64,000 bases of DNA from Macrostomum lignano. Taxonomy: Eukaryota. The translations under genes were made by a program, and so were the position numbers. The stretch covers positions 47,583-111,582 of the forward strand of contig NIVC01000437.1 in assembly GCA_002269645.1 (NCBI GenBank), given 5' to 3'. The notes under the pieces were generated by a model, which was given only the letters and a program-made list of their open reading frames with translations, was not told where the DNA came from and ran no database searches. Position 1 is the first letter of the stretch. Every line of letters begins with the position of its first letter. This document shows, in pieces, positions 10,670 through 49,717 of the stretch.

Positions 10670-12526
10670 TTACTGGATATTTTTAATAAAATTAGTATTC
10701 AGCATATACAGCTCATAACAGCAGGGTCTTTTCAAGCCGCTGTATGATTTATATAATCTTGACCAGGGGTTCATGTCCCATTTCCAAGTTCGAAAGCCGA
10801 TGTTGAAAATGTCCAAAAGAATCCTTACGAACCGACGGTAGTTAGATGCTCTGTAAAAGTAGCCGTCCGTGTGCGTCTCAAACAGAAGCTGCTTCACCCT
10901 AGCCAGGCAGCCCTCTTGTAAAGCCTGCGCTAGCGAGTCCCATTCTGCATATTCGATGTCAATCTTGAGAATGTCGATAGTCGAATTGCCCGGCACAAGT
11001 TCCTGAAACAGTTGGCACAGAGAGCGCATCTTCCATCCTTCGGATGAGGTTTCATTGTTTGACGACAGACCGATGCTGTAGAACCAGGAACTGTTCTTAC
11101 GCCTGTGATCCTTCACGCCTAGCATGCTGGGGTCAAACATGAACACTCGGCAGCCGAATCTGTCCGCTAACTCGTCATCGTATTCCCAAACGTCATTGAT
11201 CCCGAACGAGAAGGCGATGCAGCCTTTTGACCGACGAATGTCAAAGGGCTTGCTGAAGCAGACATCCCAACCGCCATCCTTTATGGACCCGATTCGCTTG
11301 CTATTAGGGCAGAAGATATGCTGCTGCTCTACTAGCTGATAGTACAGATATTCCAATTGGGTCTGAGACATGGCAGCGAGGTTAGCTCGGAGTGCTACAC
11401 GAATTTGATCACAGTGCTGTCCTTTGAAAATTGGATTATTCTTCAGAGGAAAGTCAATAAAGCTTCCAATGTCGTTCGTCAGTTTGATATTGGCAGAGTG
11501 GCTGCTTAGGAAATTGACGTTAATGTAGCTTAGGTGCACTATACTGGCACCTATTGAGGTGTTTGCTTTAAGTGCACTTACATTCCATTGTCGAAATCCA
11601 ACACTTTTCAGTTCCATCAGAGCACGAATATTTCTTTGAAGCTCGTCAGACGTCGGAGACTTTGTTACGTCGAATTCAATATTCAAGAGTAGCTGCTTTG
11701 TTAGTCCCAGCGAACCGTCAGTCGCGGCAGTTTTCAGCAGTGAAAAATGTCCTGACTGGATGTCGATTTTCAACACGTCGATCACTGATTTATCGGCTTT
11801 GAAGCGCTTTAGGTAGCCGAGATAAGTGTTGGTACCGACAATGTCGTTAGTAGTGAAGTTACCTAGACCCTCTCTGAGCAGTAGAATGCGTTCACTGTGC
11901 AGTCGACTAGATCGCGTCATTTTCGGGTAAAATGACAATACATAGCAGCCATGAACTGTGGAGAAGTGTTCTTCGAATACTGGAGACGTCACATTGTCGC
12001 TGAATGAGAAGACGTAGCAAGGCTGAGTTGGACTGTATTGACCCGCCGTGCACACGTTGTAGCCAGTCGTATTTTTACCGTTTTTAACCATTGCAGTCTG
12101 GTTATTGTCGTGACAGAGCTCCGTTGACTGCTTCAGCATCTGCTTGAACATATTTTCCAACTCTGGTTTTGTTTTGCTTTGCAGTTGGTGTCGAGTTAAG
12201 AGCTTGGAACGCTTGATGGTTGCCTTGGCCATGTCAACATTCCAGAGCCATTGCGCAAGTGTTCCCAAGGATAAAAAGCTGCTCCCTGGTTTACCTGTTA
12301 AAGTTTCGGAAGTTTGTGTATATTGGCTCAATTGAGCAACGAACTTACTGGATCCACTGCGTAGAATTACAGTTTTTATACTTATTACAGTCAGCATTGC
12401 AATTATAAATCCGATGGTTATTCTTTTTAAGCATGTCGTACTTTGAAAACAGCCGTGCCTCCTCCATTCGACCAGAAGCAGATGCATCGTGCGCGATTTT
12501 GTCTGACTGAGAGAATCCTCTTGCAT
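10670..12526 (-). CDS. METTL24-like (Methyltransf_22/FkbM-related) type II membrane protein with two tandem methyltransferase domains, 618 aa, intronless
   Basis: Single ORF with an N-terminal hydrophobic anchor (ITIGFIIAMLTVISI). C-terminal domain: GSIKDGGWDVC...SFGINDVWEYD...FMFDPS...IDILKIDIEYAEW...VKQLLFETH. The N-terminal domain is a degenerate copy: GYNVC...PCYVFSFS...IDVLKIDIQ...TKQLLLNIEF. Confidence 0.85.
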   Translation of the reverse strand: MQEDSLSQTKSRTMHLLLVEWRRHGCFQSTTCLKRITIGFIIAMLTVISIKTVILRSGSSKFVAQLSQYTQTSETLTGKPGSSFLSLGTLAQWLWNVDMAKATIKRSKLLTRHQLQSKTKPELENMFKQMLKQSTELCHDNNQTAMVKNGKNTTGYNVCTAGQYSPTQPCYVFSFSDNVTSPVFEEHFSTVHGCYVLSFYPKMTRSSRLHSERILLLREGLGNFTTNDIVGTNTYLGYLKRFKADKSVIDVLKIDIQSGHFSLLKTAATDGSLGLTKQLLLNIEFDVTKSPTSDELQRNIRALMELKSVGFRQWNVSALKANTSIGASIVHLSYINVNFLSSHSANIKLTNDIGSFIDFPLKNNPIFKGQHCDQIRVALRANLAAMSQTQLEYLYYQLVEQQHIFCPNSKRIGSIKDGGWDVCFSKPFDIRRSKGCIAFSFGINDVWEYDDELADRFGCRVFMFDPSMLGVKDHRRKNSSWFYSIGLSSNNETSSEGWKMRSLCQLFQELVPGNSTIDILKIDIEYAEWDSLAQALQEGCLARVKQLLFETHTDGYFYRASNYRRFVRILLDIFNIGFRTWKWDMNPWSRLYKSYSGLKRPCCYELYMLNTNFIKNIQ

Positions 12527-12642
12527 AAAATCCGATTGCTTATTTAATTTACGTTTAATGGGCGCCTTCGCAGCAAGGAATCAATAGTCTATGGTACAAC
12601 TACTTTTGTACCGGGACCAATATATCATTTAATGGTCATTTA

Positions 12643-13377: not shown

Positions 13378-15063
13378 TGTAGCGTATTCACTAATATTAT
13401 AAAAGTATTGCAGCTAGCGTATTATAACTACTGTATTCTAGAAACTTCCGCGTAAACACGCACTTTCCATATTTGGCATTTTGAATTCCCGCGCACCCCC
13501 ATTCTAGAAACTGCTTCTCGAACTTTCCGGATTCCGGAATGTTCCATCAACACGAATATAAATATACAGCACCCTAGCACGCAATTACTCAAGCCCGTTT
13601 TCTCTATTCTTTTCCACACGGAAAACAATCAAAGAAAAATTAAAGCAAACGAACCACCGCGTTTCACGCCTCAATTATTTTCGCAATTCTACAACTGGTC
13701 CGGTGAGGCGTCCAAAATTCATCTGAGTCCCCAGCAGGGGGCTAGGCCGTCGAAGTGCGTGTAAATATCCGTGTAAATACTGCCTGAATGTAGCATAACG
13801 CCATCATCGACATTGCCATCAACGCCATGCCTCATCGTCGTCTGCACGCGCCCGTCGTCCACGCCACCACTGGATATAGCTACCGGATGCATCATACATG
13901 TACGACACGATATTAACCTGATCGACGTAATTCTACAAACGTGGTATCGAAGTTGACACGGAACTCATCGACGACAGACAGACAAATGCCTACACGGGTA
14001 TTACCAGGCCGTTCGATAGAGTCTTCCGTGAACCCCACCAAATTCTACGCCAAAATAAGCCGAAATATCACCAGTCAACCAAGCTGCTATATTGAACAAG
14101 GAACGCGCGGCTGAAACCTTCGGCGATCGTCTTTATATGACACCTTCCACGAGGTGATCGACATCCCGAGGGGCAACCCAGCCTGTCAATCGGTTCGTCT
14201 TGTGCGCTCCATCAGCCATGCCCAGCAATATTCAGCGACTGCCCGCCGTCGTCCTCATATTATTCTCGGGAGTCTGCCTGCAATTCGAAAGGTCGTCCTG
14301 CCTGACGATCCGTCGTCCTGGAGTGTGGCTGAGCGTGCCACAAGCATCCCAAGTTCTCCTACCAGAAGCGCGTTGCGTGTACACCTGCTACGAGATGCCT
14401 ACCGAAGCAGAGCGACAGCCCGCCTCGACTCACGGTGCACCGATCTTGTTCCGGGTGTCGTCTGTCTGCATCCTGGCACATTCCGTCTATGTACATTGCT
14501 ATTCGGCCAATCGGGGGCATCGCAGTAAGGTCTGATTTGCGAAATAACTAATTAATCAAGCAGCTTGACTTCACAAGTAATAACGTTTCACTTATTATTG
14601 AATATGTACATCATCGCCCCTATGCTGTAACAGTTTGAAATCTGCATGTACAAACGTACATGTCCATCCCCCCCCAATTCATCGTCTAATGTATATAATT
14701 TTTTCCTGTACTTCTCCAGGTGACTCCGTCTCCGGCGGGGGAACTGTTGTAGCGTATTCACTAATATTATAAAAGTATTGCAGCTAGCGTATTATAACTA
14801 CTGTATTCTAGAAACTTCCGCGTAAACACGCACTTTCCATATTTGGCATTTTGAATTCCCGCGCACCCCCATTCTAGAAACTGCTTCTCGAACTTTCCGG
14901 ATTCCGGAATGTTCCATCAACACGAATATAAATATACAGCACCCTAGCACGCAATTACTCAAGCCCGTTTTCTCTATTCTTTTCCACACGGAAAACAATC
15001 AAAGAAAAATTAAAGCAAACGAACCACCGCGTTTCACGCCTCAATTATTTTCGCAATTCTACA
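13378..15063 (+). mobile_element. Non-autonomous LTR retroelement (TRIM-like), 1686 bp; LTRs 13378-13693 and 14748-15063
   Basis: Two 316-bp direct repeats offset by 1370 with TG...CA ends and a 4-bp TSD TGAC (13374-13377 / 15064-15067). PBS-like TGGTCCGGTGAGGCG at 13696; purine tract GGCGGGGGAA just before the 3' LTR. No gag/pol motif seen internally. Confidence 0.92.
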
Positions 15064-15299
15064 TGACTACAGACGAGATCTACCCGAGATCGACATTGAA
15101 GAGATATCTCATAAGGACTCAAGGTAATTGAATACCTTCTGTTGACTTACTGGGTTGCCTAGCTACTGAGCTAGAAGTGATTGTTCCTTGATTATCGAAA
15201 GTCGGGTAATAAGGAACACATCATTACAACAAAAATAGTGAAAAGAAGATAGAATAGAAACAATATAATATTAATATTTGATTACACCTGTCCCAATAA

Positions 15300-16664: not shown

Positions 16665-19600
16665 ATGAGTTGTCCTGCCATGCAGCTGACGTCATGCAGC
16701 ATTCAGTTCAGCAAGCTGGGCGACCCGCTGATGTCGCTCGATTTTGCGTCCAACGAGGCGCAGACGGCGTCCACTGTTACAGTTTACAATCGGAAATCGT
16801 TCGGCATGCAAACCAAAGTCTGCGATGCCCCGCTGCCAAAAAGTGGCAGTTCGTCCTCGAATGAGTTGAAGAGCCTGCTTCATCAAATATTGACCGCGGT
16901 TGAGTCTTTCAGAACAGAGATCGGCTTCGACAAAGACTTTCACGGCAAAGCGGCTGCTCATCCTGAGCAGGGCATGCTAGCATTCCACTTCTCCCAAGGC
17001 CCATCATCTGCGGAGGCCCCGAATCAGCCAGTCTGGAATGAGGCCTGGACTCGAACCCCTAGAGCCGATTTTCCCTCGAAAATCGAAGTGGCTAGCGGTG
17101 AATTCGGACATCAATTCGTGTTTCGAGCGGGTAAAATGCTGACGGAGCTTAGAAGAAAGGTAGTTAACAAATGTCATTTGTATTTTTTACTGGCAAAATA
17201 TATATTTGATAATTTAGATGGTTCTCATGGACATAGTCGCCCAATTTATAAATGGCATAGGTTTCCAGGGTCACTGGCATGAGCACAGTCACCTCAGCTG
17301 TTAATGGCATAGGTATCCATTCAGGTCACTGGCATGAGCACAGTCACCCCAGCTGTTAATGGCATAGGTATCCATTCAGGTCACTGGCATGAGCACAGTC
17401 ACCCCAGCTGTTAATGGCATAGGTATGCATGCAGGTCACTGGCATGAGCACAGTCACCCCATCTGTTAATGGCATAGGTATCCAGGTCACTGGAATGAGC
17501 ACAGTCACCCCATCTGTTAATGGCATAGGTATCCAAGGTCACTGGCATGAGCACAGTCACCCCAGCTGTTAATGGCATAGGTATCCAGGTCACTGGCATG
17601 AGCACAGTCACCCCAGCTGTTAATGGCATAGGTATCCAGGTCACTGGAATGAGCACAGTCACCCCAGCTGTTAATGGCATAGGTATCCAGGTCACTGGCA
17701 TGAGCACAGTCACCCCATCTGTTAATGGCATAGGTATCCAAGGTCACTGGCATGAGCACAGTCACCCCATCTGTTAATGGCATAGGTATCCAGGTCACTG
17801 GCATGAGCACAGTCACCCCATCTGTTAATGGCATAGGTATCCAAGGTCACTGGCATGAGCACAGTCACCCCATCTGTTAATGGCATAGGTATCCAAGGTC
17901 ACTGGCATGAGCACAGTCACCCCATCTGTTAATGGCATAGGTATCCAAGGTCACTGGCATGAGCACAGTCACCCCATCTGTTAATGGCATAGGTATCCAA
18001 GGTCACTGGCATGAGCACAGTCACATAGAGATTTCGATTACATGAGTGTGTACAAGCACATGCAGCGTCATATTGTTTTCATTTCAACACTGCTCCAAAA
18101 AAACGTCCCGTTGAACAGCGCAACAACCGGGAGACCTTGATGATCACTGATGTAAACGGCGTTAACAGTACCGGCGACGAAGAAATTTTCGACGCCATCG
18201 ACAGTGAAATATCGGATAGCCATCGAGTGTGCTTCGGCGTTCGCTGGACAGCCAGAACTGGCCGTCTGCGCGTTGTCTGCTGGCTGCATCCTGAGTGGCC
18301 GGAGCAGCGACTGGCACGAGCTGGACCGCATTACAGCGCCTGGCTGCGCAGTCGAATGAGGAAGGCCGCTGTTAACAACTATCTGTGCGTATTCGACGAT
18401 TTTGTTGGAGAACGAAACCTGAGTAATTCAAATGATGTCGCGGAGGCTGTACTGGCAGAGGCTGACGGCAGAGGAGAAGGTAAGTTTACACTGAGTTAGC
18501 GAGGTAACTTGGTACTTCTCGGTCCCTCGGTCACAGTCATATCGAGATTTTTATGACGTAAGTGAGTGTGTACAAGTACATATAGCACACGTCTAGCTTT
18601 CTTTGATGTAAAACTTCGAAGTTCACATAGGGCAGGGCTTTGACAACTGTCGCAAATTACGAAATGGACAGTTGACCCGAGAGAAAGGTAGAAAGTTAGC
18701 GAGTTAGTCAGACCGATTCCACCGACCTCACAGCACTCAAAAGGATACGTGCGCAGGAACACACTAACGCAGGACACTTGTCTTGAGGGTTTAGCTCACG
18801 TGCCCCTAAGTAAATCATAAGGCAACCCTTGATTAATTTTCGGGCACAATGTCCAAATCCAGGGAATTTCAACGCGAGAGTCAGACGCGTTACCGCTGAT
18901 GTTCTCTGGCCCTACGACGTTAATATAGCACTCGGTTTCTTACTTTTCCAGACTGCCCGCTATTTTTTTTGGCCGTGGAGTCGCACAGTTTCACCGTGGC
19001 CGATTGGCTCCTCGAATACAGAAAAAAACTGCTTCGACAAGAAGACGACAGGATCGAAGTTGTTACCATTCAAGCAATCGACGCCTACAATAAATGGGGC
19101 GACACGGCGCTAACGCGTTGTTGCGGTCGCGGCGGTGATGCAAAAGTCATCAATTACTTGCTGTCCAGAGGCTGCGATCGGCTTCATCAGACAGACATCA
19201 CCGGTAACACCGCTATGCACCGACTCGCTGCATCAATCCCGTCAACTGCCGACGGTCAGACTGTGGTTCGGCCGGTGCTCAACGCCCTGCTGAATGGATT
19301 GTCGGTCGATCTGCTCACGGAGTGGCTTGCCAAGGAGAACCACGCAGGGGAGCGAGCGGCGGCTTTAGTTTCCAATGCCGCTATGCTGGATGCTCTGTTG
19401 GAGGCGTTGGAAATTCCAATGGCCAGGTGACGAAGTTAAATTATTGTATTCTTGCTTTTGTTTAACTTGCACCGACCAGCCTGTTTACAAGATTTTAGAC
19501 TATTTTGGGGAAATAACGCACCAACCATACTAGAATTTGTGTCACAATCCAATGCGTCACCATTCAAATTACAGTTTGTGTCACCATCCAAACTACAGTT

Positions 19601-22600
19601 TGTGTCACCATCCAAACTACAGTTTGTGTCACCATCCAAACTACAGTTTGTGTCACCATCCAAACTACAGTTTGTGTCACCATCCAAACTACAGTTTGTG
19701 TCACCATCCAAACTACAGTTTGTGTCCCTTCAAGTTTATATTGTGCCACCCCCTCATCGGGCAGTTTGTGACCGTCGCCATGCAATACGTGTCGCCATTT
19801 AGTGATAAACTTTTGTCTCCCCTACCTGCATGTATGCAGCGCTCAGAGACACCAAGCTGGGACACTCGGCAGGCCCAAACTCGACTGCCAGCTGCTGTTT
19901 CGCTCGGCCAGCGGCTCCAGCATCGGGCACAGTCTGGCAGCTTTCGGCAGTCTTGAAGCCGTCGAGCCGGTGGTCACTGGCCGGCTGGGCGTGGAAACTT
20001 GGAAAGAACTGCTGTGCGGCAACTGCCAGTTCGGCTACACGCCGATGCACGCAGCCTGTCAGACTGGGAAATGGTCCAACGTTGCCTACCTGATCCAGGA
20101 AATGATCCAGCCTCCGCCGCCTCCGTCTGCGCTGGACTTGGCTATCAGAGAGCGTCAGCTTGTCACCTATAAACAGTTTAACAATTTTGCCGATTGCATG
20201 AAGACTGGGTCGAATATTTGCACCGAATCAGCTGATATGAGCTGCTCTGATGCTGAGGCCGTAGCTTTAACCATTTTGGATCGAGCAGAAGACTGCCTTG
20301 TGGCTGCGGATCAGGAGAATGGTAATCTACCTTCTATAATGCGAGTTGGCGTGGTAGCTCAGCTAATGTATCGGCTTATCTATCAGCTGGTGCCTCAGAA
20401 ATATTTGACTTGGTCACGGTTTCTTAGAAAATCTTTTAATCCCAGACAGGTGTCTCCACAACAGGCAGGCATCCTAAACAGTTTTTGAGACATGTGCCCC
20501 TGACAGGTATCAGAGACAGTTGTCACAGACCGGTATCACAGACAGGTGTCACAGACAGGTGTCACAGACAGGTGTCACAGACAGGTGTCACAGACAGGTG
20601 TCTCAGACAGGTGTCACAGACAGGTGTCACAGACAGGTGTCACAGACAGGTGTCACAGACAGGTGTCACAGACACGTGTCACAGACAGGTGTCACAGACA
20701 GGTGTCACAGACAGGTATCACAGACACGTGTCACAGACAGGTGTCACAGACAGGTATCACAGACACGTGTCACAGACAGGTGTCACAGACAGGTATCACA
20801 GACAGGTGTCACAGACAGGTATCACAGACACGTGTCACAGACAGGTGTCACAGACAGGTGTCTCAGTCGTACAACGTTCTCCCATACCCAACGCTATCCA
20901 GACAAAACTGAGGCGGCCAACTTTCGCCTCCAGTGGTCCATGGCCGCCCTGGCAACCACAGCGTCGTCTGCTTTTAGCGACGACGCCAGCAGAGACCCGG
21001 TCCTCGGCTGCGTTCAAGCGGCCCTCCGGGACGGGTCGGCAGCGCCGCTGCGGGGTCTGATTCGCGGTAGCGGCTCGGACGACAGCTCGGGATTGGGCCT
21101 GGCGCTTCAGGTTTGCTGATTAAATTGTTGATTAAAATTTAAACTAGCGATTGCATACTACTGACGAGTAGGGGCATCGAGATTGGGCGTTCATCCCTTT
21201 TTTGCGTGTGAAAAATTGCAAACTGACATGACTAGTTTTCTTCAGGAATTCTTGACGCTCGCAAGACGAGTTGACGAGTCTGTAATGAGCTTGTGACAGT
21301 AAAGATTCCGCAGGACAAGTTCTGGACAATCGCGACTTCTCAATTTGTTTGGAACGTGCAGTGGGACGGGGAAAGAGCACAAAGCGAGGAGAAATGAAAG
21401 GGAAGAGAGAAAAGAAAGGAGAGGGGACATGAAGGATGCAGAGGGCGCAGAGGGCGCAGAGGGCGCAGAGGGCGCAGAGGGCGCAGAGGGCGCAGAGGGC
21501 GCAGAGGGCGCAGAGGGCGCAGAGGGCGCGGAGGGCGCAGAAAAAAGGATACAGAGGACACAGAGGACACATTGGACGCAGAGGAGAGGACACAGAATAT
21601 AAAGAACACAGATGAGTGGACACAGGCGAGGGCACAGAGGAGAGGACACAGAGGACCCAGAGGACACAGAGGACGCAGAGAACACAGAGGACACAGAGGA
21701 CGCAGAAGAGAGGACACAGGAGAGGGCACAGTGGACACAGAGGACACAGAGGACGCAGAGGACGCAGAGGACGCAGAGGACGCAGAGGACACAGAGGACG
21801 CAGAGGACGCAGAGGACACAGAAGAGAGGACACAGGAGAGAGGACACAGAAGAGAGGACACAGGAGAGGGCACAGTGGACACAGAGGACACAGAGGACGC
21901 AGAGGACACAGAGGACACGGAGGACGCAGAGGACACAGAAGAGAGAGCACAGGAGACACAGAGAAGAGGACACAGGACGCAGAGGAGAGGGCACAGGAGA
22001 CACAGAGAAGAGGACACAGGACGCAGAGGACACAGAGGACACAGAGGACGCAGAAGAGAGGACACCGGAGAGGGCACAGTGGACACAGAGGAGAGAGCAC
22101 AGGAGACACAGAGAAGAGGACACAGGACGCCGAGGAGAGGGCACAGTGGACACAGAGGACACAGAGGACGCAGAGGACACCAGAGGACACAGAGGACACA
22201 GAGGACACAGAGGACACAGAGGACGCAGAGGACACAGAGGAGAGAGCACAGGAGACACAGAGAAGAGGACACAGAGGACACAGAGGAGAGGGTACAGTGG
22301 ACACAGAGGACACAGAGGAGAGAGCACAGGAGACACAGAGAAGAGGACACAGGACGCAGAGGACACAAAACTTGCATTTCTTGCAGGCCCTGGAGTCGCA
22401 GCCGCACCAACTGCTCAAACTCACTCTGCCGGGCGAGAATCTCACTTGTCCAGGGAGTCTGGACGGCCTTCTCGGCCTGGCACTTCGGCGGAAGAAGTGG
22501 CAGCTGGCTGGCGAGCTGCTGCTGGCTCGCCAGTTCGACCTGCTGCCAGCCTGCCTGGGCATCATGCTGACCCTGCGGCTGCGACAGGCGGACCTGCTGC

Positions 22601-25600
22601 AGCAGTCAGACGAGAGTCAGGCAGCTGCGCTACTTGGCAGCAGTTCCAGACGACGGGGCAGCGCTGTTGATGTTGAACTACCGTTTGAACTGGCAGAGGT
22701 GAGGCACCATTTGAGCGCAGGAGACCACTTTTAAATTGTAAGAAAACCCATTTGGTTTCAAGCCTTGGTTACGTAGCTCGGGCAAAGTGAAACTGTATCT
22801 AAAAGTTTTCAAAATAACGTTTTCAAAAACTTTAACCATCGAAATTTGCGTATTTGTAGCATCCATCTGTTTCACTTGTCCATGGCTCTGTCAGGACTCG
22901 ACACATTGAGTCGAATCATTTCATTCATACCTGCTCTTCCAATCTCAAAAAAAACTCTTTCAAGGCTCTCTACAGTCAGGCAAAGCAGGTGTTCTGCACG
23001 GCGCTCCAGCGGCTCTACAGGGGCGCCATCACGGAGGCGCACAAAGGCCTGGTGTTCAACTATCTCGGCGGTCGGTTTCACGGCGGTGACAGCTCAGGCA
23101 GGGGACCCCTGTTCTGTCCGGACGTGATTCGCGGCGATAGCGACGGCAGCGACGGTCGGTGCCTTTTCGACCTTATGCTGCTAACGCACGAACCGGAGCT
23201 GCTGGCTCTGCCCTGCGCCACAGACTACGTCGACCTGCTACTGGCCAGCCCGCGAACCTTCTGCTGTCATCTGTGCCGCGACAGCCACGGCGACCGGCGC
23301 TTGGAAGGCCCGAGTTGCAGCTCCGGCCCGGTTCGAATCATCTCGAGCCTCTGGCCGGAACGTGGCGACCGGCTGCGGCGACGTCTGCCAAATGGCTGCA
23401 CTCCGCAGGTCAGCATGCTTGTCTGCGCGCTCTTCAATGCCGCCTTTCTCTGCCTGCTTGGCTTCTACGTGTACGAGGTGAGGAAATTACCGGCTTAACT
23501 TGGTGAAATAAATGGTCAGGGAGGTGGACTGAAGTAGAGGTTCTGAGGGATACGATGACTGAGCAGACACGATGACCGAGCAGACACGATGACCGAGCAG
23601 ACACGATGACCGAGCAGACACGATGACCGAGCAGACACGATGACCGAGCAGACACGATGACCGAGTAGACACTATGACCGAGCAGACACGATGACCGAGC
23701 AGACACGATGACCGAGTGGACACTATGACCGAGCAGACACGATGACCGAGCAGACACGATGACCGAGTAGACACTATGACCGAGCAGACACGATGACCGA
23801 GCAGACACGATGACCGAGTAGACACTATGACCGAGCAGACACGATGACCGAGCAAACACGATGACTGAGCAGACACGATTACCGAGCAGACATGATGACC
23901 GAACAGACTCGAATACGTGTCAAAATCTAAATATACTAAATTACATACTAAACTTTCGAAAACCAACCTGCTAATTCCTCAGGTGGGAGAACCGAGATCT
24001 CACGGCGCAATGATGTTTTTGAAGCTGCTACTCCTGTTCTGCGGCCTGTCCTACTCTGTCCAAGAGTTGCAAGACGTTCGATCCGTAAAGTTCGTGCCGG
24101 GTTATAAATCGATGAGCTTTTGCAAGCGACTGTCCTGGTACCTGTCCTACAGATGGAACCTAGTGGACATTGCAGCCATGGCATTTCTACTGATTGGATT
24201 AATTTGGATCATTGTACTGGATGCTACAACCGTATCGTATAAAGAAACCACCAACGGTTTGTCGTACTACTTTGCCAGGTAAAAACTACTTTGTTGATTA
24301 GCAACCGCCAACCGCAACTTGAGATTAGAAACACCAATTAGCAACATCACAGTCAGATTAACAACCCTGCTTTGAGATTAGCAACCTTCCTAAGCGCATG
24401 ACGCGTATTCACCTGAAGCATAGCAACACCACATCTGCATTCTCCAGGCTATTTTTAGCTGTGTCATTCATCTTCTACTGTATGCGGATGCTGTCCAGTC
24501 TTGGTTATTTCGAACGTCTCGGCCTCTACATCAGCATCACTAAGACGACAATTATGATGGACGTGATTCCGTTTCTGATTGTCAATGCGTTTTTTCTCGC
24601 ATCGTTTGGTATATTGATTGTGTGCCTGCTGTTTCCCAGCGGGCACACCTACGTGCAAGGTAAGCGATGATTTATCTGCGACTGAACCAGCATTTTCTAT
24701 CAGAACAAAGATCATTCGTGTCAACCTGTAAAATGTAGGAATACACCTGTAAAATGTAGGAATACACCTGTAAAATGTAGGAATACACCTGTAAAATGTA
24801 GGAATACACCTGTAAAATGTAGGAATTCACCTGTAAAATGTAGGAATACACCTGTAAAATGCAGGAATACACCTTTAAAATGTAGGAATTCACCTGTAAA
24901 ATGTAGGAATTCACCTGTAAAATGCAGGAATACACCTGTAAAATGTAGGAATACACCTGCAAAATGTAGGAATACACCTGTAAAATGTAGGAATGCACCT
25001 GTAAAATGCAGGAATACACCTGTAAAATGCAGGAATACACCTTTAAAATGTAGGAATTCACCTGTAAAATGTAGGAATTCACCTGTAAAATGCAGGAATT
25101 CACCTGTAAAATGTAACAGGTGTATTCAACCAGTAAAATGTAAGAAGACACCCATTACACTTGTCAAATATAGAAACAAAGCTGCGTCTTTCAAGAAGCA
25201 TTCTTCGAATTCTTGAACCAAAACAGGCAACAACTACGAGAACCCAACTCGATCGGAGATGCTATCAACCGGCTCCTACATCACCGAGGTGTTCCAGCGC
25301 CCTCTGCTCGCCCATTTCGGCGAGTTTGGCATGGACTGGCTGCGCCAGTGCCAGCGCGATCCGCCCAATTCTGGTCAGGAGTCAGAAAGAAACTGCCCTC
25401 ATCCGCTTGGCAACAAAATCTATACCCGAGCAGTTCTGTTCGTCTATCTGCTCATCATTAGCATAGTGCTCATCAATGTGCTCATCGCAAAGCTCAGCCT
25501 GACAGTTGGCAAAGAAGACGAACGAGCTCGCGTCATCTGGAGAAGTTTCCGGGCCCAGCTGCTGGCCGAGTTCGGCGGAGAAAGTAACTCGACGCCGCCG

Positions 25601-26680
25601 ATTCTGCTGGCCATCGCCTGGATTGTGACGTCCCCCGCCAGGCTGTGGAGATGCTGCACGTCTAGGAGGTCGCCAACTGCCGACTCGGTTGGGGGCGCCG
25701 CAGCTGCACAAGGGCACAACGATGTCAACGGAGGTGCTTCAGCTGTTACTGTGACTGCAACTGCTTCCAGTGAAGACTATTCGTACAACATCACGAGTGA
25801 CACGGTTATGACCACTGTAGTGGCCAAAGGTTCTCAGGGAAGCCTGCTATCGGAGGCTGAGAAAGCCGAACTGGGCAGAGCTGATGAGGTGAGTTCCCTC
25901 ATGCTACCAGTAGTTGCCGGAGACTGTGTGCGATTGCGTTTCTGCTTGCTCCTCGGGAGCTCGAAGGTGTATAGGTGGCTCAGTAACTTGAGATCTGGGT
26001 CGTATGGGAGGCTGGCCCAGCAACTGAGGGTCTGTAAGAGGCTGGCCCAGCAACTAAGGATCTGGGAAACTAATCCAGCAACTGAGGATCTGGGAGGCTG
26101 GCCCAGCAACTGACACTATGGGAGGCTGGTGGCCCAGCAACTGAGGATATGGGAGGCTGTTGGTCCAGCAATTTTTGAGGATCTAGGAGGCTAGCCCAGC
26201 AACTGAGGATCTAGGAGGCTAGCCCAGCAACTGAGGATCTGGGAGGCTGGCATAGCAACTGAGGATCTGAGAGGCTGGCCCAGCAACTGGGGGATCTGGG
26301 AGGCTGGTAGCCTAGCAAATGGGGGATCTGGGAGGCTGGCCCAGCAACTGGGGGATCTGGGAGGCTGGTGGCCCAGTAACTGGGGTATCTGGGAGGCTGG
26401 TAGCCCAGCAACTGGGGGATCTGGGAGGTTGGTAGCCCAGCAACTGGGGGATCTGGGAGGCTGGCCCAGCAACTGGGGGATCTTGGATGCGGTTTCGTGA
26501 TAAAAAGCAAACTCCTTATCTTTTAAACCACCTCAGAGGAGCAGCGCAGCCCTGCCCTGGTGGCAGGTTGCTCACGGCAACAATCGCATGGCGCCGAAAG
26601 ATTTCCGCGAGTTTCTCTGGTTCCAGTCGATGCAGTTCAGAACAGTGCGACAAAAGTTCGCCATAGCCAGTCGCAATTGA
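16665..26680 (+). CDS. Ankyrin-repeat TRPM-like cation channel, ~1389 aa. Exons 16665-17130, 18066-18479, 18952-19426, 19840-20321, 20902-21110, 22387-22698, 22980-23477, 23983-24278, 24448-24659, 25227-25888, 26537-26680
   Basis: All 10 introns GT-AG with matching phase; total 4170 nt (1390 codons). Ankyrin motifs GDTALTRCC, GNTAMHRLA, GYTPMHAAC. TRPM-like S3 RWNLVD, S4-S5 MRMLSSLGYFERLGLYI, pore VFQRPLLAHFGE with two pore-loop Cys, S6/TRP box INVLIAKLS...WRSFRAQLLAEF. The ATG could lie further upstream. Confidence 0.88.
17250..18024. repeat. 51-bp minisatellite, ~15 copies (channel intron 1)
   Basis: Unit GTCACTGGCATGAGCACAGTCACCCCAGCTGTTAATGGCATAGGTATCCAG. Confidence 0.95.
19570..19725. 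repeat. 24-bp minisatellite (channel intron 3)
   Basis: Unit ACAGTTTGTGTCACCATCCAAACT. Confidence 0.95.
20500..20865. repeat. 13-bp minisatellite (channel intron 4)
   Basis: Unit GACAGGTGTCACA. Confidence 0.95.
21436..22368. repeat. Purine-rich 9-bp-based compound repeat (channel intron 5)
   Basis: (GGGCGCAGA)n followed by mixed GAGGACACA/GAGGACGCA units. Confidence 0.93.
23552..23905. repeat. 17-bp minisatellite (channel intron 7)
   Basis: Unit GATGACCGAGCAGACAC. Confidence 0.95.
24724..25114. repeat. 21-bp minisatellite (channel intron 9)
   Basis: Unit ACCTGTAAAATGTAGGAATAC. Confidence 0.95.
26006..26482. repeat. ~27-30-bp G-rich minisatellite (channel intron 10)
   Basis: Unit GGAGGCTGGCCCAGCAACTGAGGATCTG and variants. 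Confidence 0.93.
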
Positions 26681-30222: not shown

Positions 30223-32004
30223 TCACCAGCCGCCACCTGGGGACGGATAGGACAGCTGGCTGCCTAAATTTGATAGCGGCATTTCTAAACTGTTGCCAAC
30301 CGGATGCACCGGCTGCTGCTGCTGATAACCTTGATGATGCCAATTAGATTGGTAATCAGCCGTATTGCCTGGATACTGACTGTACAGCTGCTGCTGCTGC
30401 GGCGGAGGCGGATGCGCCTGATATTGGCCGCTTTGATAATCCATCGGCGTCATCATGCCGCCCGGATGCTGCGCCGGATACTGATGATGATATGGCGATG
30501 CGGCAGGCATAGTGTAATGCGAACGATACTGATGCTGCTGGTTGTACGGATGCTGGGGTGTACCGTAACTGTGATATCCGTGATACCCAGATCGGTTATA
30601 GTACAGGTGCTGCTGCTGCTGTTGCTGCTGCTGCATCGGAGGAGGCGGCGGAGGCGGCGGCAATGATTGCAACAAGCTGCTACCAGCTGAAGAAGAAGAG
30701 TTTCCGCTAGTTGAAGAACTCTTCGGCTTGCACAGCTCCTGTTCTAGAGCTGGCATCAGAGAGGACACTGATGCGGCCGCTGTTGGACTCTGTTTCATTT
30801 CAACACCCGACTGGGTAGATTTTCTACCTGAACGACCAGCAGAAGGCTGCTGCTGCTGCTGCTGTTGTCGCTTCTTCGTGGATGATGGCGACTGCGGCGG
30901 CGGCAGCGAGGCGAGCAGAGACTGTTGCTGAGTTGTCAGAGCTTGAAATTGGCCCGAGTTACAGTCGGGCATTTTTGGCTTGCTGTTAACCTGCTGTTGA
31001 GGATGACGGCACACCAGCGCTCTGCTGTCATATTCAGGAACCAGAGTATCTTCTTCTGGCACGCAACGAACTCGTTGAGTTATCGGAGCAGCCGGCTGAC
31101 AAAACTCGTCGAATTCAATGTCAGCATCAATCTTAGGCCGCTGACTGTCTAACAATTTCAATTGCTCATCAAATCTATTAGAAGATTCAATCCAACGTTG
31201 CAGTCGACAATTTGAAGATTTTTCATCATTACTTTCGTTTTCGAATTCAGCTGTTGGATCGGCGGATTTTAGCGTTGATCGAAATCGCTTCAACAGCGGA
31301 TGGGTTGGTGACGGAGGCGACGCGGAGGGCGGCGGCAGACGGGCAGGCCCGAGAATCTGCATCAGTAGTCGATGATTGCGACGGTATCTGTCAGTGGCGG
31401 CTTGCCTGATTGATTCTGCAGGATCTGGCAGGTCTTCCCATTCGGGCTCTTGATAATGATGGTGAAGCAAGGACTGGTGTCGTCTGTGAGGATGCTGGTG
31501 ACGCATCGGCTGATGCTGATGATGATAAGAGCTACGCTTCGAACCGCTTTGCTCAGGAAAGTCATACACTGATGAGCTGTTCATCTGTTGCTGCTGTTGC
31601 TTCTGCTGCTGCTGCTGCTCTCGATTAGCCAACCAAGCTTTGTACTGAGGCGAGTTGTGATAGAGCCTCATAGCCTCAGTGTGCTTGGCTTTCTCAACCT
31701 CGTATTCGTCAACCAGTTGCTGCTTTTCCGGCTCGCCAAGTTCTCGCCACATGTGGCCGATAATTTTGCCAACTTCCCACAGTTTCAAATTGGGATTGTC
31801 GGCCTTCACGCGGTCCCATACTCTCCGGCTGTAGCGCATGTACGGCATCAGCGGTTTCTCTGGCGGTTTTGGTGGCTTGCCGCTGCGACTGCGCGGCTGC
31901 TGCTGCTGACCTGACTGCGGCTGCAGCGGAGGCGGCGAAGATGAGGGAGATAATGCTGACTGCTGCTGCTGCTGATCATGATTCGGCTTGACTGATTGGC
32001 TCAT
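30223..32004 (-). CDS. SMARCE1: SWI/SNF subunit BAF57 (HMG box), 593 aa, intronless, Q/P-rich tail
   Basis: KPPKPPEKPLMPYMRYSRRVWDRVKADNPNLKLWEVGKIIGHMW closely matches the BAF57 HMG box; NHRLI motif present as YRRNHRLLMQIL. Confidence 0.93.
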   Translation of the reverse strand: MSQSVKPNHDQQQQQSALSPSSSPPPLQPQSGQQQQPRSRSGKPPKPPEKPLMPYMRYSRRVWDRVKADNPNLKLWEVGKIIGHMWRELGEPEKQQLVDEYEVEKAKHTEAMRLYHNSPQYKAWLANREQQQQQKQQQQQMNSSSVYDFPEQSGSKRSSYHHQHQPMRHQHPHRRHQSLLHHHYQEPEWEDLPDPAESIRQAATDRYRRNHRLLMQILGPARLPPPSASPPSPTHPLLKRFRSTLKSADPTAEFENESNDEKSSNCRLQRWIESSNRFDEQLKLLDSQRPKIDADIEFDEFCQPAAPITQRVRCVPEEDTLVPEYDSRALVCRHPQQQVNSKPKMPDCNSGQFQALTTQQQSLLASLPPPQSPSSTKKRQQQQQQQPSAGRSGRKSTQSGVEMKQSPTAAASVSSLMPALEQELCKPKSSSTSGNSSSSAGSSLLQSLPPPPPPPPMQQQQQQQQHLYYNRSGYHGYHSYGTPQHPYNQQHQYRSHYTMPAASPYHHQYPAQHPGGMMTPMDYQSGQYQAHPPPPQQQQLYSQYPGNTADYQSNWHHQGYQQQQPVHPVGNSLEMPLSNLGSQLSYPSPGGGW

Positions 32005-32191
32005 GATTGGACAGCTGCAGCTGAAATCATCATTGTTTTGTTTCGTATTGAATATTAATTGGTAAAGTTGATAAAGTTGAATGCTACTTAAATGTTATTT
32101 TCCTACTAATATTTTTCGCCTACACCTACTTTCATGGCGGCCACTGGGTGCATGATCATTATCATTACCAGACAGCGAATTTTAATTGCCA

Positions 32192-34344: not shown

Positions 34345-37169
34345 TTAATTCTGACCGCCGCGAGCTCTCCTAGCCTTGTGCTTGTCAAAGCGAGCCTCCA
34401 TCTCGTCCAACACCCTGGGTGTGTACCGGACCACCAGTTTCACTGTGCCCTGGGCAGCCTTCAACAGATCCACAGCTTTCTCGTGGTGCTCGTTCTCAAC
34501 TGACACGCCATTGACGCTGAGCAGCTGATCGCCGCGTTTCAGACTGCCCTCGCGGTCGGCCACGCCACCAGGGATGATCCGGCTGATGTAGATAGGCGAG
34601 TTCTGCTCTTTGCCGCCCATCACGTTGAAGCCAAGGCCTTCCTCAGTTTTTGGCAGTTCAACAACCCGCGGATGCGCGTGACCTTCAGCGGCGGCGAAGG
34701 CAGCCACGGTGGCTTTGGCTGTGGCCGAGGCGCGAACCTCTGGACTGCCGCCAACGTCGACAGTCTCGTAGACATGTTCGTACACTTCGCGAACCATGTT
34801 GCAGAAATCCGACTGTAGAATACGACTTAGAGCGGCCAGCTTCTCGTGCTGAACATCTGGGCAGCTTTGAAGCTTCTCAAGTAGCTCCACAGCGCGCTGG
34901 ATGTCTGTCAGGGAGGCAGGTGGGGGTTACTATATAATTGGGATCACAGAGATGAAGTCATGGTTAAGAATGACTTCTTGGGACTTAACAAGAGGTTTTG
35001 TCTAATTGCAATGGTAATATATAGTGTATAAATGTCATCTTTATATAGATGAACTAGGATATATACATATAGATATAGTAAGTTAACTATGAGCAATTTG
35101 ACTACCACACATTAAGTATCAATCTAGTCCTAATCTAATCCTAGACCTTAACTCAAATAGTAAACCTAATAATCTAAAAACCTTAGCCTAACCTAAACAA
35201 TTAGAAATAAATATGTAACAAAGAGTAAAACCAACTTATAGCTTATTAAACTAGTCTAGAATACTCAGACATTGTCAAGTTATATTGATATTTATCTGTA
35301 ATATTGCAATGTAGGTTTTGCCATTGTCTTGATCATTCGAGTTGTATACATTGATTCAGTATATAGACAACTCTTTGTTCTTTCAAATCAATTTTATTTG
35401 TTGAAAATTGTATTTTAGAATCTATTTTTTCTTCATTTATAATTACTTACTTAAAAAAATTCAATTTTCAACTAGCATAATGTTCTTTGCTGCTTTTAAT
35501 TTTATTACAAAGTTAATACACAAATAAAAATAAATTATAATTCAGTTTAACTAGAAAATTGAACCATACCTGGCAAGAAAATAGTTGAAATGTTCAGTGT
35601 TGGGCACCATTAATGAAAATCTTTACTTCCATTAATAGCAAAAACATTAGCATTAAAACAAAAAATCTTAACTTATAAACTCGTAATTTCATTAAGTTAA
35701 CTGATTATTGTTAATAAGCAATAATCCATTAAAGTTAACACAGAAAATAGAGAAATCTTGTACTAATTTCCAAAGTAGACTTCACAATGCACTATCTTTG
35801 CTTTTGTACCTTTTTAGTGAAACACAGAGGTCATTTAAAGAATTTACGAGCTAAAAAGTAATAAATAATATTTTTAAAAACTTGTATGTATAATACTACT
35901 AAAGGTAAGCATATGGTAAAATAATTAACTTAACTATTTGAAACTTGAAAGCTAATTAGTTAATCAAAAAATATGATTAGGAAGGTTGTTTTAGTAGCAT
36001 TAACAGGCACACTAGAAAGTTAAGAAAGATTGGGAAAGAAGTGAATCAAAGCGATTGATGCTCACGTATAACAATAAAGTTAAACAAATTTTATTTATTA
36101 TTAAAGTTTATTATTAAGAAGTTGTTACATTTGCATAATCATCCTTATAAACAAAGAGATTAATTAGGCATTTAGGTAAATTCAAATACATTTGTAATGT
36201 TATAACTTCTCATCAAACTTATATTTTTGTTCTTTCTTTATGTCTTTATTTGGTCATTGATATTGTCATTAACATTAATGATGAATTTGTCTCACACAAT
36301 TATTAACACAAATTTGTTAATCCCTTAGTTCAAAAAAATCTTCATGGCAGTCTGTTAATGTTAATAAAAAATCTTAATGCTTATTCTATTCATGCTTATT
36401 AACAGATTAATGCTTATTTATTAATGGATTGGTGCCCAAGGCAATACTGGAAATGTCAATTAATAAACAAATAGTTGCTAAATGAATAAACACATTATCC
36501 TTAAGATATAGCATCAGTGGTCATAAATCTGCTTTGTTACCAAAGTGGCTATTATCAAAGAAAGTGGATTATATTCAATCTAAGGGTAAATAAGTCATCA
36601 TATAAACATTTTAATATTATTGGTTTTAATGGAAGTAGAACCAATTAACCAAAGTTATTTTTATTCTAAAACAGGGCCTTGGATATCATTATATCCAAAT
36701 TTATGTTTAAAATTATTTAAACATGCAAAACCAGAAGATTGCTATTTAATTATGATAGCAATTTTTCAATGGCTATATGTCAAGCAAAAAATTTGTGCCT
36801 AAAATAGTTTTAAAGTTGACAGAAACAAACTTTAAATAGTGCAAAATGGTATATACACTTTTAAAGCTTAAATTAAAAATCATTTTATATATTTCTACTC
36901 TATTCTGGCTTTGTTCTCAGTCAGAGAAAAGTAGGTTTTAGACTCAACATTTAAAATTTGTTAGATTTTAGACTATTTTGCTTCAAGTAGAAGAAAACAA
37001 AAATAATAAACTATTAAAAAGCAAAAATGATGCCAGCTTTATACTGGATCAGGAAAGAATAATCCGTAAAAAGGTCAAACTAGGCCAGGCCAGCAGGCCC
37101 TAATGTTTTGCCAATAGAATAGAATGAGTTGTGAGCCTCACCTTGTTGAAGGGTCAGTGGCTCCGCCAT
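34345..37169 (-). CDS. LIN7: Protein lin-7 homolog (L27 + PDZ), 195 aa; exons 37169-37142 and 34904-34345
   Basis: Exon 1 MAEPLTLQQ(G|GTGAGG) joins phase 1 to [13 protein letters not shown]...[39 protein letters not shown]; total 588 nt. Confidence 0.96.
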
Positions 37170-49362: not shown

Positions 49363-49717
49363 ATTCGTGGAATTTCGAGAACTTAACAATCAAATTTGTT
49401 TTACTACGAAATGTTTCAATGGTTTCAATTTGTGCCTTAGCCTCCATTTTTGATCCAAAATAAAGCATTAACAAAGTTTTCACGGTTTTCTTGTTGCAAA
49501 AATTACCTAACATTATTCTTTTTGCCTCATTAAATTTAGCGAATTCATCTTCGGACATTAACGACTTTTGTTGAAGTTTTCAATTTTTATTCTGAAATTT
49601 CGCACCTGAAAAAAATAAATAAACTGTTTAATTGCTGACCAGCAGCGTCGCTTCTGTTGAAGCCGTTTCATTTTTTCGTATGAAAAACTGTGGGTTTTTT
49701 TGCTTTTTATTGCTACA

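What the first reader, a model, noticed from the sequence alone, without database searches (positions are those of the whole stretch)
16665..26680. Chimeric TRP channel: canonical ankyrin repeats fused to a TRPM-type channel core
Established: TRPM N-termini consist of MHR1-4, including the SLOG-like MHR1/2, whereas canonical ankyrin arrays typify TRPA/C/N/V. Seen: exons 3-4 encode GxTALH-type ankyrins. Exon 7 has MHR4/pre-S1-like sequence (DGRCLFDLMLL...ELLALPCATDYVDLLL). The pore-S6 closely parallels TRPM4/2 (VFQRPLLAHFGE vs VFYRPYLQIFGQ, a two-Cys pore loop, WRSFRAQLLAEF vs WKAQRYRLIREF). No SLOG, Nudix or kinase domain was recognised, and all 10 junctions are in phase, so this is one gene. 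Inference: an undescribed TRP architecture, with the ligand-sensing MHR1/2 replaced by ankyrins, that may gate on different stimuli; an acidic filter (FGE) hints at Ca2+ permeability.
Basis: partly seen in the sequence, partly recalled or inferred. Interest (0 to 1): 0.75.

Follow-up and report, generated by a model that had tools for sequence, protein, structure and literature searches.

The report
Flatworm ankyrin-bearing TRPM-like channel gene
This is a real 11-exon gene of the flatworm Macrostomum lignano for an ion channel with ankyrin repeats in front of a TRPM-type pore. That design is already known from the parasite drug target TRPM_MCLZ, so this is a new relative and not a new kind of channel.

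Summary
An 11-exon, 1381-codon gene (16665-26680, + strand) can be built with ten canonical, in-phase GT/AG junctions. Exons 3-4 encode ankyrin repeats that pass Pfam's cut-off. Exons 7-10 encode a six-helix channel whose best matches by sequence and predicted fold are all TRPM. No SLOG/MHR1-2, Nudix or kinase domain was found in the protein or the window.

Near-identical fragments place the window in Macrostomum lignano. That genome holds at least 19 clusters of ankyrin + TRPM-like channels without SLOG. [quoted passage not shown] I identified those orthologues by their published residue numbers.

The window gene is not an orthologue. It sits in a divergent clade (89% bootstrap) that is, as far as source names were retrieved, all Macrostomum apart from one metagenome contig. 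Its best but weakly supported sister (41%) is the TRPM_MCLZ group.

It most likely forms a tetrameric, non-selective, Ca2+-passing cation channel gated through its S1-S4 pocket.

Still unverified: exons 1-2, which have no homologue, and the single-transcript claim.

Verdict: new member of a known kind, modest interest.

The parts
16665..17159 (+). Exon 1 (aa 1-165), putative start codon. No recognisable domain.
   Evidence: First ATG of an open stretch, with a phase-0 donor AAG|gtagtt. Codon-usage score is +0.156 in frame against -0.23 and -0.21 out of frame. No homologue in any search, so it is unverified.
18119..18479 (+). Exon 2 (aa 166-285). No recognisable domain. Its 3' end supplies the start of the first ankyrin-like unit.
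   Evidence: Acceptor gaacag|CGC and donor AAG|gtaagt, in phase with exons 1 and 3. Codon-usage score +0.111 in frame. No homologue found. hhalign against SLOG was negative.
18952..19426 (+). Exon 3: ankyrin repeats (GDTALTRCC..., GNTAMHRLA...).
   Evidence: Pfam Ank_2, Ank and Ank_4 over aa 292-378. 87% identical to M. lignano fragment P0003, which starts at the same residue.
19840..20321 (+). Exon 4: a further ankyrin repeat (GYTPMHAAC...) and the start of the helical linker.
   Evidence: Pfam Ank_3 and Ank_5 at aa 505-530. Paralogue models P0005 and P0006 support the donor at 20321/20322 (..AADQEN|D|KTEAANF). A longer in-phase alternative (to 20449, joined to 20934) lacks that support.
20902..21110 (+). 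Exon 5: Ala/Ser-rich linker segment.
   Evidence: In phase on both sides. Covered by P0003, P0005 and P0006. P0001 runs across the exon 5/6 junction. Low AF2 confidence.
22387..22698 (+). Exon 6: linker helices with the family motif LLLARQFDLLPACL (MHR4-like).
   Evidence: phmmer against paralogue linkers: P0021 at E 1e-12, also P0013, P0015 and P0018. The QFDxxP motif appears in the family consensus. Profile-profile comparison: Clade I linker against TRPM_MCLZ-group linker gives 96.6%, E 6.6e-10, and that group against canonical MHR3/4 gives 99.5%, E 1e-22.
22980..23477 (+). Exon 7: distal linker, pre-S1 and helix S1. An alternative acceptor lies at 22965.
   Evidence: Contains the quoted DGRCLFDLMLL...ATDYVDLLL. 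AF2 pLDDT is 80-94 for most of it. Foldseek alignments to TRPM extend through it.
23983..24278 (+). Exon 8: S2, S3 and the start of S4. Carries the TRPM-type cation-site residues (S2 ..VQELQD.., S3 ..RWNLVD..).
   Evidence: HMMER alignments to nvTRPM2 and hTRPM4. Family alignment. E, N and D are nearly invariant columns.
24448..24659 (+). Exon 9: S4, the S4-S5 linker and S5.
   Evidence: Junction AG|G = Arg restores ..YYFAR|LFLAV.., as in P0151 and P0165. The conserved S4 Arg is present.
25227..25888 (+). Exon 10: pore helix, filter (HFGEFG), two-Cys pore loop, S6, TRP helix (VIWRSFRAQLLAEF), STPPILL re-entrant segment and a low-complexity tail.
   Evidence: AF2 pLDDT is about 85-95.
26537..26680 (+). 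Exon 11: conserved C-terminal helix (DFREFLWFQSMQFRTVRQKF) and the stop codon.
   Evidence: P0007, P0151 and P0165 confirm the junction ..GRADE|RSSAALPWW.. and the end of the protein. The motif FLxxQxxxxRxxR appears in the consensus of the 43-sequence family alignment. AF2 predicts a helix with pLDDT about 88.

Best explanation
The locus is a single protein-coding gene of Macrostomum lignano, or a very close relative. It encodes a subunit of about 1380 aa of the ankyrin-bearing, SLOG-less "TRPM-like" channel class, whose characterised member is Schistosoma TRPM_MCLZ.

Shown here:
- About five or six ankyrin-like units, three of them canonical.
- A helical linker homologous, by transitive profile comparison, to the MHR4-type linker of TRPM.
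- A six-helix TRPM-type core with pore helix, FGE filter, two-Cys loop, S6, TRP helix and a conserved C-terminal helix.
- No SLOG, Nudix or kinase module.

Inferred:
- Four subunits form a non-selective cation channel that also passes Ca2+.
- Gating runs through the S1-S4 (VSLD) pocket. This pocket keeps the TRPM cation-site residues (S2 Glu and Asp, S3 Asn and Asp) and the S4 Arg, so cytosolic Ca2+ and/or a small ligand are the likely stimuli.
- Gating by ADP-ribose through MHR1/2 or NUDT9H cannot occur, because those modules are absent.
- The ankyrin array takes the structural place of MHR1/2-MHR3 in the cytoplasmic ring.

The gene is a divergent paralogue from a large Macrostomum expansion, not an orthologue of TRPM_MCLZ.
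For: Organism and family:
- Fragments 76-98% identical are all M. lignano UniRef entries.
- More distant hits (26-33% identity) are ankyrin + Ion_trans proteins of M. lignano, Opisthorchis, Dicrocoelium and Schistocephalus.

Core is TRPM-type:
- PDB phmmer gives nvTRPM2 at 2.5e-12, then TRPM4, TRPM2 and TRPM5. NOMPC scores 2.6e-5, and no TRPC or TRPA is in the top 60.
- Paralogue P0017 aligns to nvTRPM2 from residue 579 (the region between SLOG and the TM core) to the TRP helix at 127 bits. Its TM domain scores 34 bits against NOMPC.
- The AF2 model with an alignment has pLDDT 69.8 and pTM 0.69. The Foldseek top 50 are all TRPM, with 580-720 aligned columns.

No SLOG.

Linker homology.

Known architecture:
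- PMC10788528, PMC11731825 and PMC12861061 describe it.
- P0204, P0203 and P0212 carry exactly the published TRPM_MCLZ residues: H827, H831, Y864, E868, R943, H946, Y1038 and Y1117, plus Y940 and F952.

Placement:
- Clade I is supported at 78% (Kimura NJ) and 89-91% (ScoreDist NJ).
- The TRPM_MCLZ group is supported at 70%.
- Clade I + TRPM_MCLZ group is the best arrangement at 41%, against 12% for Clade I basal.

Functional residues are conserved. TRPM_MCLZ raises cytosolic Ca2+ and carries inward current in HEK293 cells (PMC10788528).
Against: - No transcript data were available. Joining the ankyrin and channel halves rests on phase, on database gene models of paralogues (P0001, P0003) and on the conserved architecture of relatives.
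- Older database models of this gene family split the two halves: P0151 and P0165 start at exon 6.
- Exons 1-2 have no homologue.
- Pfam Ion_trans and PF25508 do not reach E 0.1 on this protein. The direct profile match of its linker to canonical MHR3/4 is weak.
- The sister relation to the TRPM_MCLZ group has only 41% bootstrap, from distance trees with a single outgroup family.
- Two to three of the six predicted meclonazepam-contact residues (H827, H831 lost; Y1117 is Phe) and the pore Tyr are not conserved, so the pharmacology cannot be transferred.
- Ion selectivity and the gating stimulus are inference only.
Confidence: 0.8

Rival explanations
1. The window gene and its Macrostomum clade (Clade I) are a separate, unrecognised TRP family that branches before TRPM + TRPS. 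It would keep the ancestral ankyrin N-terminus from before the SLOG domain was acquired.
For: In the Kimura-distance NJ tree, Clade I sits next to the TRPN sequence P0086, with all SLOG-bearing TRPMs and the TRPM_MCLZ group on the other side. That split has 47% support. The Clade I linker has no direct significant match to canonical MHR3/4. Himmel et al. inferred an ankyrin-free TRPM-TRPS ancestor (PMC7306681), so an ankyrin-bearing outlier would be informative.
Against: With the better-corrected ScoreDist distances and two TRPN outgroups, Clade I is basal in only 10-12% of replicates and joins the TRPM_MCLZ group in 41-70%. The branches are long, so long-branch attraction to the outgroup is expected. 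The linker is homologous to that of the TRPM_MCLZ group, which in turn matches MHR3/4 strongly. Where source names were retrieved, the clade members are all from one genus, apart from one metagenome contig. That pattern fits a recent expansion.
Confidence: 0.1
2. The model joins two neighbouring genes: an ankyrin-repeat protein (exons 1-5) and an N-terminally short channel (exons 6-11).
For: UniRef models P0151 and P0165 begin exactly at exon 6, and P0003 covers only exons 3-5. Intron 5 is the longest at 1.3 kb. No transcript evidence could be obtained.
Against: Exon 6 starts without a Met, at a phase-0 acceptor that matches the phase-0 donor of exon 5. P0001 reads across exon 5 into exon 6. 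Full-length relatives carry ankyrin repeats, linker and channel in one protein. One of them is the Schistocephalus protein P0046/P0197, whose record name suggests a transcriptome origin (not checked here). Another is the cDNA-cloned Sm.TRPM_MCLZ (PMC10788528). The split UniRef models are fragments with frame errors.
Confidence: 0.06
3. It is a decaying or non-functional paralogue within a much-duplicated family.
For: It is among the most divergent members: Pfam Ion_trans is not detected, GP is replaced by GL in the S4-S5 linker, and the pore Tyr is lost. M. lignano carries many redundant copies.
Against: The 1381 codons are uninterrupted across 11 exons with intact splice sites. Every exon shows coding-type codon usage. 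The nearly invariant family residues are kept (E, N, D, R, G, N, W). Copies 95-99% identical to the core and channel half exist (P0165; P0151).
Confidence: 0.04

Closest known systems
Sm.TRPM_MCLZ (Smp_333650) and its orthologues in trematodes, monogeneans and cestodes: the 'TRPM-like' clade of Rohr et al. 2026
   Same: Same domain order: N-terminal ankyrin repeats, no MHR1/2-SLOG, no NUDT9H or kinase, MHR4-type helical linker, TRPM-type VSLD, pore and TRP helix, about 1380 aa. Shared S2 Tyr and Glu, S4 Arg and S3 Asn/Asp. It is the best-supported sister group of the window's clade.
   Different: The window gene is not an orthologue. It lies in a separate clade (89%) that is, where source names were retrieved, Macrostomum apart from one metagenome contig, at about 20% identity in the core. 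The S1 His pair becomes Cys and Asn, the pore Tyr1038 becomes Leu, the TRP Tyr1117 becomes Phe, and the variable S4 residue is Ser. The filter is FGE rather than FEV/FDI. It has 11 exons against 3 in S. mansoni (PMC10788528). PF25508 (MHR3/4) is detectable in several M. lignano paralogues of that group (P0017, P0026, P0036) but not in this protein.
Canonical TRPM channels (TRPM2/4/5/8 and TRPM1/3/6/7; nvTRPM2)
   Same: They are the best sequence and fold matches for the linker, transmembrane and TRP regions. Shared features are the S2/S3 cation-site residues, the two-Cys pore loop, the F/YG(E/Q) filter, the TRP helix with Trp, and the PPP re-entrant segment.
   Different: This protein lacks MHR1/2 (SLOG) and has no detectable TRPM_tetra coiled coil. 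It has canonical ankyrin repeats where TRPM has SLOG plus the first part of MHR3. The 2026 survey states that all TRPM and TRPS members have all four MHRs, but it sampled no flatworms (PMC13143021).
TRPN / NOMPC
   Same: An N-terminal ankyrin array and a TRP-box channel. It is the next-best non-TRPM family by sequence.
   Different: The core similarity is far weaker: 26 bits against 49 for this protein, and 34 against more than 127 for paralogue P0017. The window protein has only about 5-6 ankyrin-like units against 29. The TRPN sequences P0086 and P0192 fall outside the clade.
TRPC
   Same: A few N-terminal ankyrin repeats, linker helices and a TRP box with a proline-rich re-entrant segment.
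   Different: No TRPC chain appears among the 60 best PDB sequence matches or the 50 best fold matches. There is no Pfam TRP_2 hit.

Membership tests
Canonical TRPM | N-terminal MHR1/2 (SLOG; Pfam LSDAT_euk PF18139) | tested here: not met
   No Pfam hit at E<=0.1 on the full protein or E<=1 on separate exons. A local SLOG HMM finds 17 other proteins but not this one. hhalign of aa 1-300 gives probability 0.2%. tblastn of SLOG-bearing N-termini against the whole window finds nothing.
Canonical TRPM | MHR3/MHR4 region (Pfam PF25508) between the N-terminal domain and S1 | tested here: inconclusive
   There is no direct Pfam or local-HMM hit. Transitive profile homology exists: Clade I linker to TRPM_MCLZ-group linker at 96.6%, then to canonical MHR3/4 at 99.5%. 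Foldseek alignments of 580-720 columns extend well beyond the roughly 330-aa core.
Canonical TRPM | Six-helix core with TRP helix, closest to TRPM among TRP families | tested here: met
   PDB phmmer: TRPM at 2.5e-12 to 1e-5, NOMPC 2.6e-5, TRPV3 7e-3. The Foldseek top 50 are all TRPM.
Canonical TRPM | C-terminal coiled-coil tetramerisation domain (Pfam TRPM_tetra PF16519) | tested here: not met
   No Pfam hit. A short conserved C-terminal helix of a different motif is present instead. Whether it forms a coiled coil was not tested.
TRPM-like / TRPM_MCLZ class (architecture) | N-terminal ankyrin repeats in place of MHR1/2-SLOG, followed by a TRPM-type channel, with no enzyme domain | tested here: met
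   Ankyrin repeats pass Pfam gathering scores. SLOG, Nudix and kinase are absent. The core is TRPM-type. The architecture is defined in PMC10788528, PMC11731825 and PMC12861061.
TRPM_MCLZ orthogroup | Clusters with Smp_333650 orthologues in a tree of the channel core | tested here: not met
   The verified orthologues form a clade with P0015, P0040, P0045, P0046, P0056 and P0064. The wider group that also holds M. lignano P0017-type genes has 70% support. The window gene lies in the separate Clade I at 89%.
TRPM_MCLZ orthogroup | Conserved VSLD pocket residues H827, H831, Y864, E868, R943 and Y1117 | tested here: not met
   The window has Cys, Asn, Tyr, Glu, Arg and Phe at the aligned positions. 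Three are identical, and the Phe is a substitution also reported in Gyrodactylus (PMC12861061).
TRPN | Long (about 29) ankyrin array and a core closest to NOMPC | tested here: not met
   About 5-6 ankyrin-like units. NOMPC scores 26 bits against 49 for TRPM. The TRPN sequences lie outside the clade.
Any TRP channel | Forms a cation-conducting tetramer | not testable with these tools
   This needs heterologous expression and electrophysiology.

The most novel reading that the evidence does not exclude
The Macrostomum clade containing this gene is an old, unrecognised TRP lineage. It would branch before the TRPM/TRPS split and keep the ancestral ankyrin N-terminus that TRPM and TRPS later replaced with SLOG. 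On this reading it is not a fast-evolving offshoot of the TRPM_MCLZ group. One intronless relative on a marine metagenome contig (P0013) hints that the lineage may exist outside flatworms.
Probability: 0.1. Interest if true: 0.6.

Novelty: new member of a known kind. Interest (0 to 1): 0.3.

Why it matters
TRPM_MCLZ and TRPM_PZQ are the validated or candidate targets of meclonazepam and praziquantel. The origin and diversity of flatworm TRPM-type channels therefore bears on anthelmintic design.

The published work covers parasitic flatworms only. The two large TRPM/TRPS surveys did not sample platyhelminths (acoel flatworms only in one), and state that TRPM and TRPS lack ankyrins or always carry all four MHRs.

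This locus shows that a free-living, early-branching flatworm holds a large expansion of ankyrin-bearing, SLOG-less TRPM-like genes, with at least 19 clusters at 50% identity. One clade is far more divergent than TRPM_MCLZ.

That is useful for rooting the TRPM-like clade. It may also provide a tractable free-living model for these channels. It does not change what is known about TRP architecture.

Tried and rejected
- The search for homologous proteins with the full 1381-aa model found nothing. With a 21-sequence core alignment it returned only 5 hits. The word index is saturated or too insensitive here, so the index-free representative search carried the work.
- Pfam on separate exon peptides gave no channel hit. 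Even the full protein misses Ion_trans.
- AF2 of aa 1-674 without an alignment gave pLDDT 36 and is unusable. I did not use its alpha/beta pattern in exons 1-2.
- hhalign of aa 1-300 against SLOG was negative.
- Supplementary FASTA files of the two TRPM_MCLZ papers are not held. I recognised the orthologues through published residue numbers instead.
- Rfam and tRNA scans of the window were empty. The bacterial promoter/terminator scan is irrelevant to a eukaryote.
- The longer exon 4 with a shorter exon 5 (1413 aa) was rejected, because P0005 and P0006 support the shorter splice.
- The Kimura-NJ placement of the clade next to TRPN was not upheld with ScoreDist distances and a second outgroup.


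Full report
**The sequence.** The window is animal DNA of about 45% G+C with many minisatellites. On the + strand between 16665 and 26680 I rebuilt the gene from open stretches and splice signals. The result is eleven exons and ten canonical GT/AG junctions, all in phase. The product is 1381 codons ending at the TGA at 26678-80.

An alternative longer exon 4 with a shorter exon 5 is also in phase. Database models of near-identical paralogues (P0005, P0006) use the shorter splice. Exon 7 has a second in-phase acceptor 15 nt upstream, which P0151 and P0165 use. Those models confirm junctions 6/7 to 10/11 and the C-terminus. P0001 reads across exon 5 into exon 6, and P0003 links exons 3 to 5.

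**What it encodes.** On the full protein, Pfam finds only ankyrin families, above their gathering scores. Ank_2 scores 37.4 bits and Ank 32.1 bits, at aa 292-378 and 505-530. By eye there are five or six ankyrin-like units, three of them canonical.

The channel half is too divergent for Pfam Ion_trans. Against PDB sequences its best matches are Nematostella TRPM2 (E 2.5e-12), then TRPM4, TRPM2, TRPM5, TRPM1, TRPM3 and TRPM8. NOMPC follows at 2.6e-5 and TRPV3 at 7e-3. No TRPC or TRPA chain is among the 60 best.

An AF2 model of aa 576-1381, built with a 43-sequence alignment, reached pLDDT 69.8 and pTM 0.69, with 85-95 across the membrane domain. Its 50 best Foldseek matches in the PDB are all TRPM channels. 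The alignments span 580-720 columns, far more than the roughly 330-residue core.

**What is absent.** No SLOG/MHR1-2, Nudix, kinase or TRPM_tetra domain is detected by Pfam. A local SLOG HMM recovers 17 other proteins but not this one, and hhalign is negative. tblastn of SLOG-bearing TRPM N-termini against all 64 kb finds nothing.

**Weak points of the model.** Exons 1-2 (aa 1-285) have no homologue in a search of 1.84 billion representative proteins, nor among the retrieved relatives. Their only support is splice phase and codon usage that is clearly coding-like in the proposed frame. AF2 without an alignment gave an unusable model for this region, with pLDDT 36. No transcript data could be reached.

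**Relatives.** The index-free search returned fragments 76-98% identical. All of them are Macrostomum lignano entries, which identifies the organism. The next hits, at 26-33% identity, are full-length "hypothetical" proteins. Their Pfam content is ankyrin repeats plus Ion_trans, and sometimes the TRPM MHR3/4 family PF25508, but never SLOG.

These proteins come from at least 19 different 50%-identity clusters of M. lignano. Others come from Opisthorchis, Dicrocoelium and Schistocephalus, and one comes from a 5-kb marine metagenome contig binned as a bacterium. SLOG-bearing canonical TRPMs appear only further down the list.

Paralogue P0017 aligns to nvTRPM2 continuously from residue 579, which lies between the SLOG and the transmembrane core, to the TRP helix at 127 bits. 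Its membrane domain scores only 34 bits against NOMPC.

The window protein's own linker does not hit canonical MHR3/4 directly. Its clade's linker profile matches that of the P0017/parasite group (96.6%, E 6.6e-10). That group in turn matches canonical MHR3/4 (99.5%, E 1e-22).

**Comparison with the literature.** The architecture is published.
- Park et al. cloned Schistosoma mansoni TRPM_MCLZ (Smp_333650). They showed that it raises Ca2+ and carries inward current in HEK293 cells, and described its long N-terminus of ankyrin-like repeats (PMC10788528).
- The 2024 review states that it "lacks the NH2-terminal MHR1/2 or SLOG domain" and instead has modules reminiscent of ankyrin repeats (PMC11731825).
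- Rohr et al. 2026 found it in over sixty parasitic flatworms and proposed calling the clade "TRPM-like" (PMC12861061).

A search with the Opisthorchis protein retrieved schistosome and cestode orthologues. The S. guineensis sequence has H827, H831, Y864, E868, R943, H946, Y1038 and Y1117 at exactly the published positions. S. turkestanicum has Y940 and E. granulosus has F952. This ties my "Group A" to TRPM_MCLZ.

MHR3 and MHR4 of ordinary TRPMs are themselves reported to contain divergent ankyrin repeats (PMC13143021, citing Burroughs 2015). The two large TRPM/TRPS surveys say that ankyrins are absent from TRPM and TRPS (PMC7306681), or that all members have all four MHRs (PMC13143021). The 2026 survey lists no platyhelminth species, and in the 2020 paper the only flatworms I found mentioned are acoels.

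**Placement.** I built neighbour-joining trees of the S1-TRP region.
- With Kimura distances and 100 sequences, the window gene groups with P0001 (100%) inside "Clade I" (78%). Clade I contains P0011, P0020, P0021 and a tight group of long ankyrin-rich proteins (100%).
- In that tree Clade I lies next to the single TRPN sequence, but with only 47% support.
- With ScoreDist distances, two TRPN outgroups and the verified TRPM_MCLZ orthologues added (107 sequences, 292 columns), Clade I has 89% support and the TRPM_MCLZ-containing group 70%.
- Their union is the tree's topology, at 41% bootstrap. Clade I is basal to everything else in 12% of replicates.

The gene is therefore a divergent paralogue, not an orthologue, of TRPM_MCLZ. 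The deeper relation is only weakly resolved.

**Mechanism.** Several things are shown. The S2 Glu and the S3 Asn and Asp of the TRPM cation site are kept, and the S2 Gln position is Asp. Also kept are the S4 Arg, the pore helix with an FGE filter, two pore-loop Cys, the S6 Asn, the TRP-helix Trp, the PP re-entrant segment and a C-terminal helix whose motif appears in the consensus of the 43-sequence family alignment.

The rest is inferred. The protein probably forms a tetrameric, non-selective cation channel that passes Ca2+. Gating probably runs through the VSLD pocket, by Ca2+ and/or a small ligand. It cannot use ADP-ribose sensing by MHR1/2 or NUDT9H. Two to three of the six predicted meclonazepam-contact residues and the pore Tyr differ, so drug sensitivity should not be assumed.

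**Verdict.** The finding is a correct reading of a real gene. "Chimeric" and "undescribed" do not hold. It is a new, divergent, free-living-flatworm member of a known kind. Residual novelty lies in the size of the Macrostomum expansion and the unresolved position of its divergent clade.

Noticed in passing
window 17251-18024, 19556-19726, 20502-20866, 21438-22363, 23552-23912, 24724-25115, 26005-26487: Seven of the gene's ten introns are largely filled by a different minisatellite each. Unit lengths are 52, 24, 13, 9, 17, 21 and 28/93 bp, with 7 to 75 copies at 72-98% match. These arrays create long spurious ORFs on both strands.
   Followed up: partly
window 10673-12580 (-): An uninterrupted 636-aa open frame with a C-terminal FkbM-type methyltransferase domain (Pfam Methyltransf_22 at 3e-17, Methyltransf_21) lies upstream on the opposite strand. 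It bounds the 5' side of the channel gene.
   Followed up: partly
window 30226-32094 (-) and 34348-34926 (-): Downstream neighbours on the minus strand are a Gln/Pro-rich HMG-box protein (HMG_box 3e-14) and a Lin-7-like L27 + PDZ protein (PDZ 2e-21, L27 3e-16).
   Followed up: partly
window 13456-13761 and 14826-15128 (+): Two copies of a roughly 300-bp element give nearly identical open stretches (TRTFHIWHFEFPRTPILETASRTFRIPECS...), about 1.4 kb apart. They lie between the methyltransferase-like gene and the channel gene. This is probably a dispersed repeat.
   Followed up: no
window 47818-49579 (-): Long open frames made of a Pro/Thr/Gln-rich peptide repeat (..KPTTHNPQKPQLPMDKT..) coincide with a strong GC-skew anomaly at 48-50 kb. 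I did not determine whether this is a repeat-encoded protein or only a minisatellite.
   Followed up: no
P0013 (protein found; 5106-bp contig): A 1537-aa ankyrin + TRPM-like channel that groups with the window's clade is deposited as a protein of a 'Kangiellaceae bacterium' MAG. Given its length relative to the contig, it is encoded essentially without introns. It is almost certainly eukaryotic DNA mis-binned into a bacterial genome, and it is the only non-Macrostomum member seen.
   Followed up: partly
P0015 (Opisthorchis viverrini, 1906 aa): This record has two TRPM-type membrane domains in tandem, at 684-992 and 1401-1684. It probably concatenates the alternative duplicated exon 3a/3b that Rohr et al. 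2026 describe for trematode TRPM_MCLZ (PMC12861061).
   Followed up: partly
P0120 (1708 aa, source not looked up): One SLOG-bearing TRPM among the hits also has a Pfam Ank_2 match upstream of the SLOG domain, at aa 63-119, E 1e-7. Ankyrin and SLOG can therefore coexist in one TRPM-type protein.
   Followed up: no
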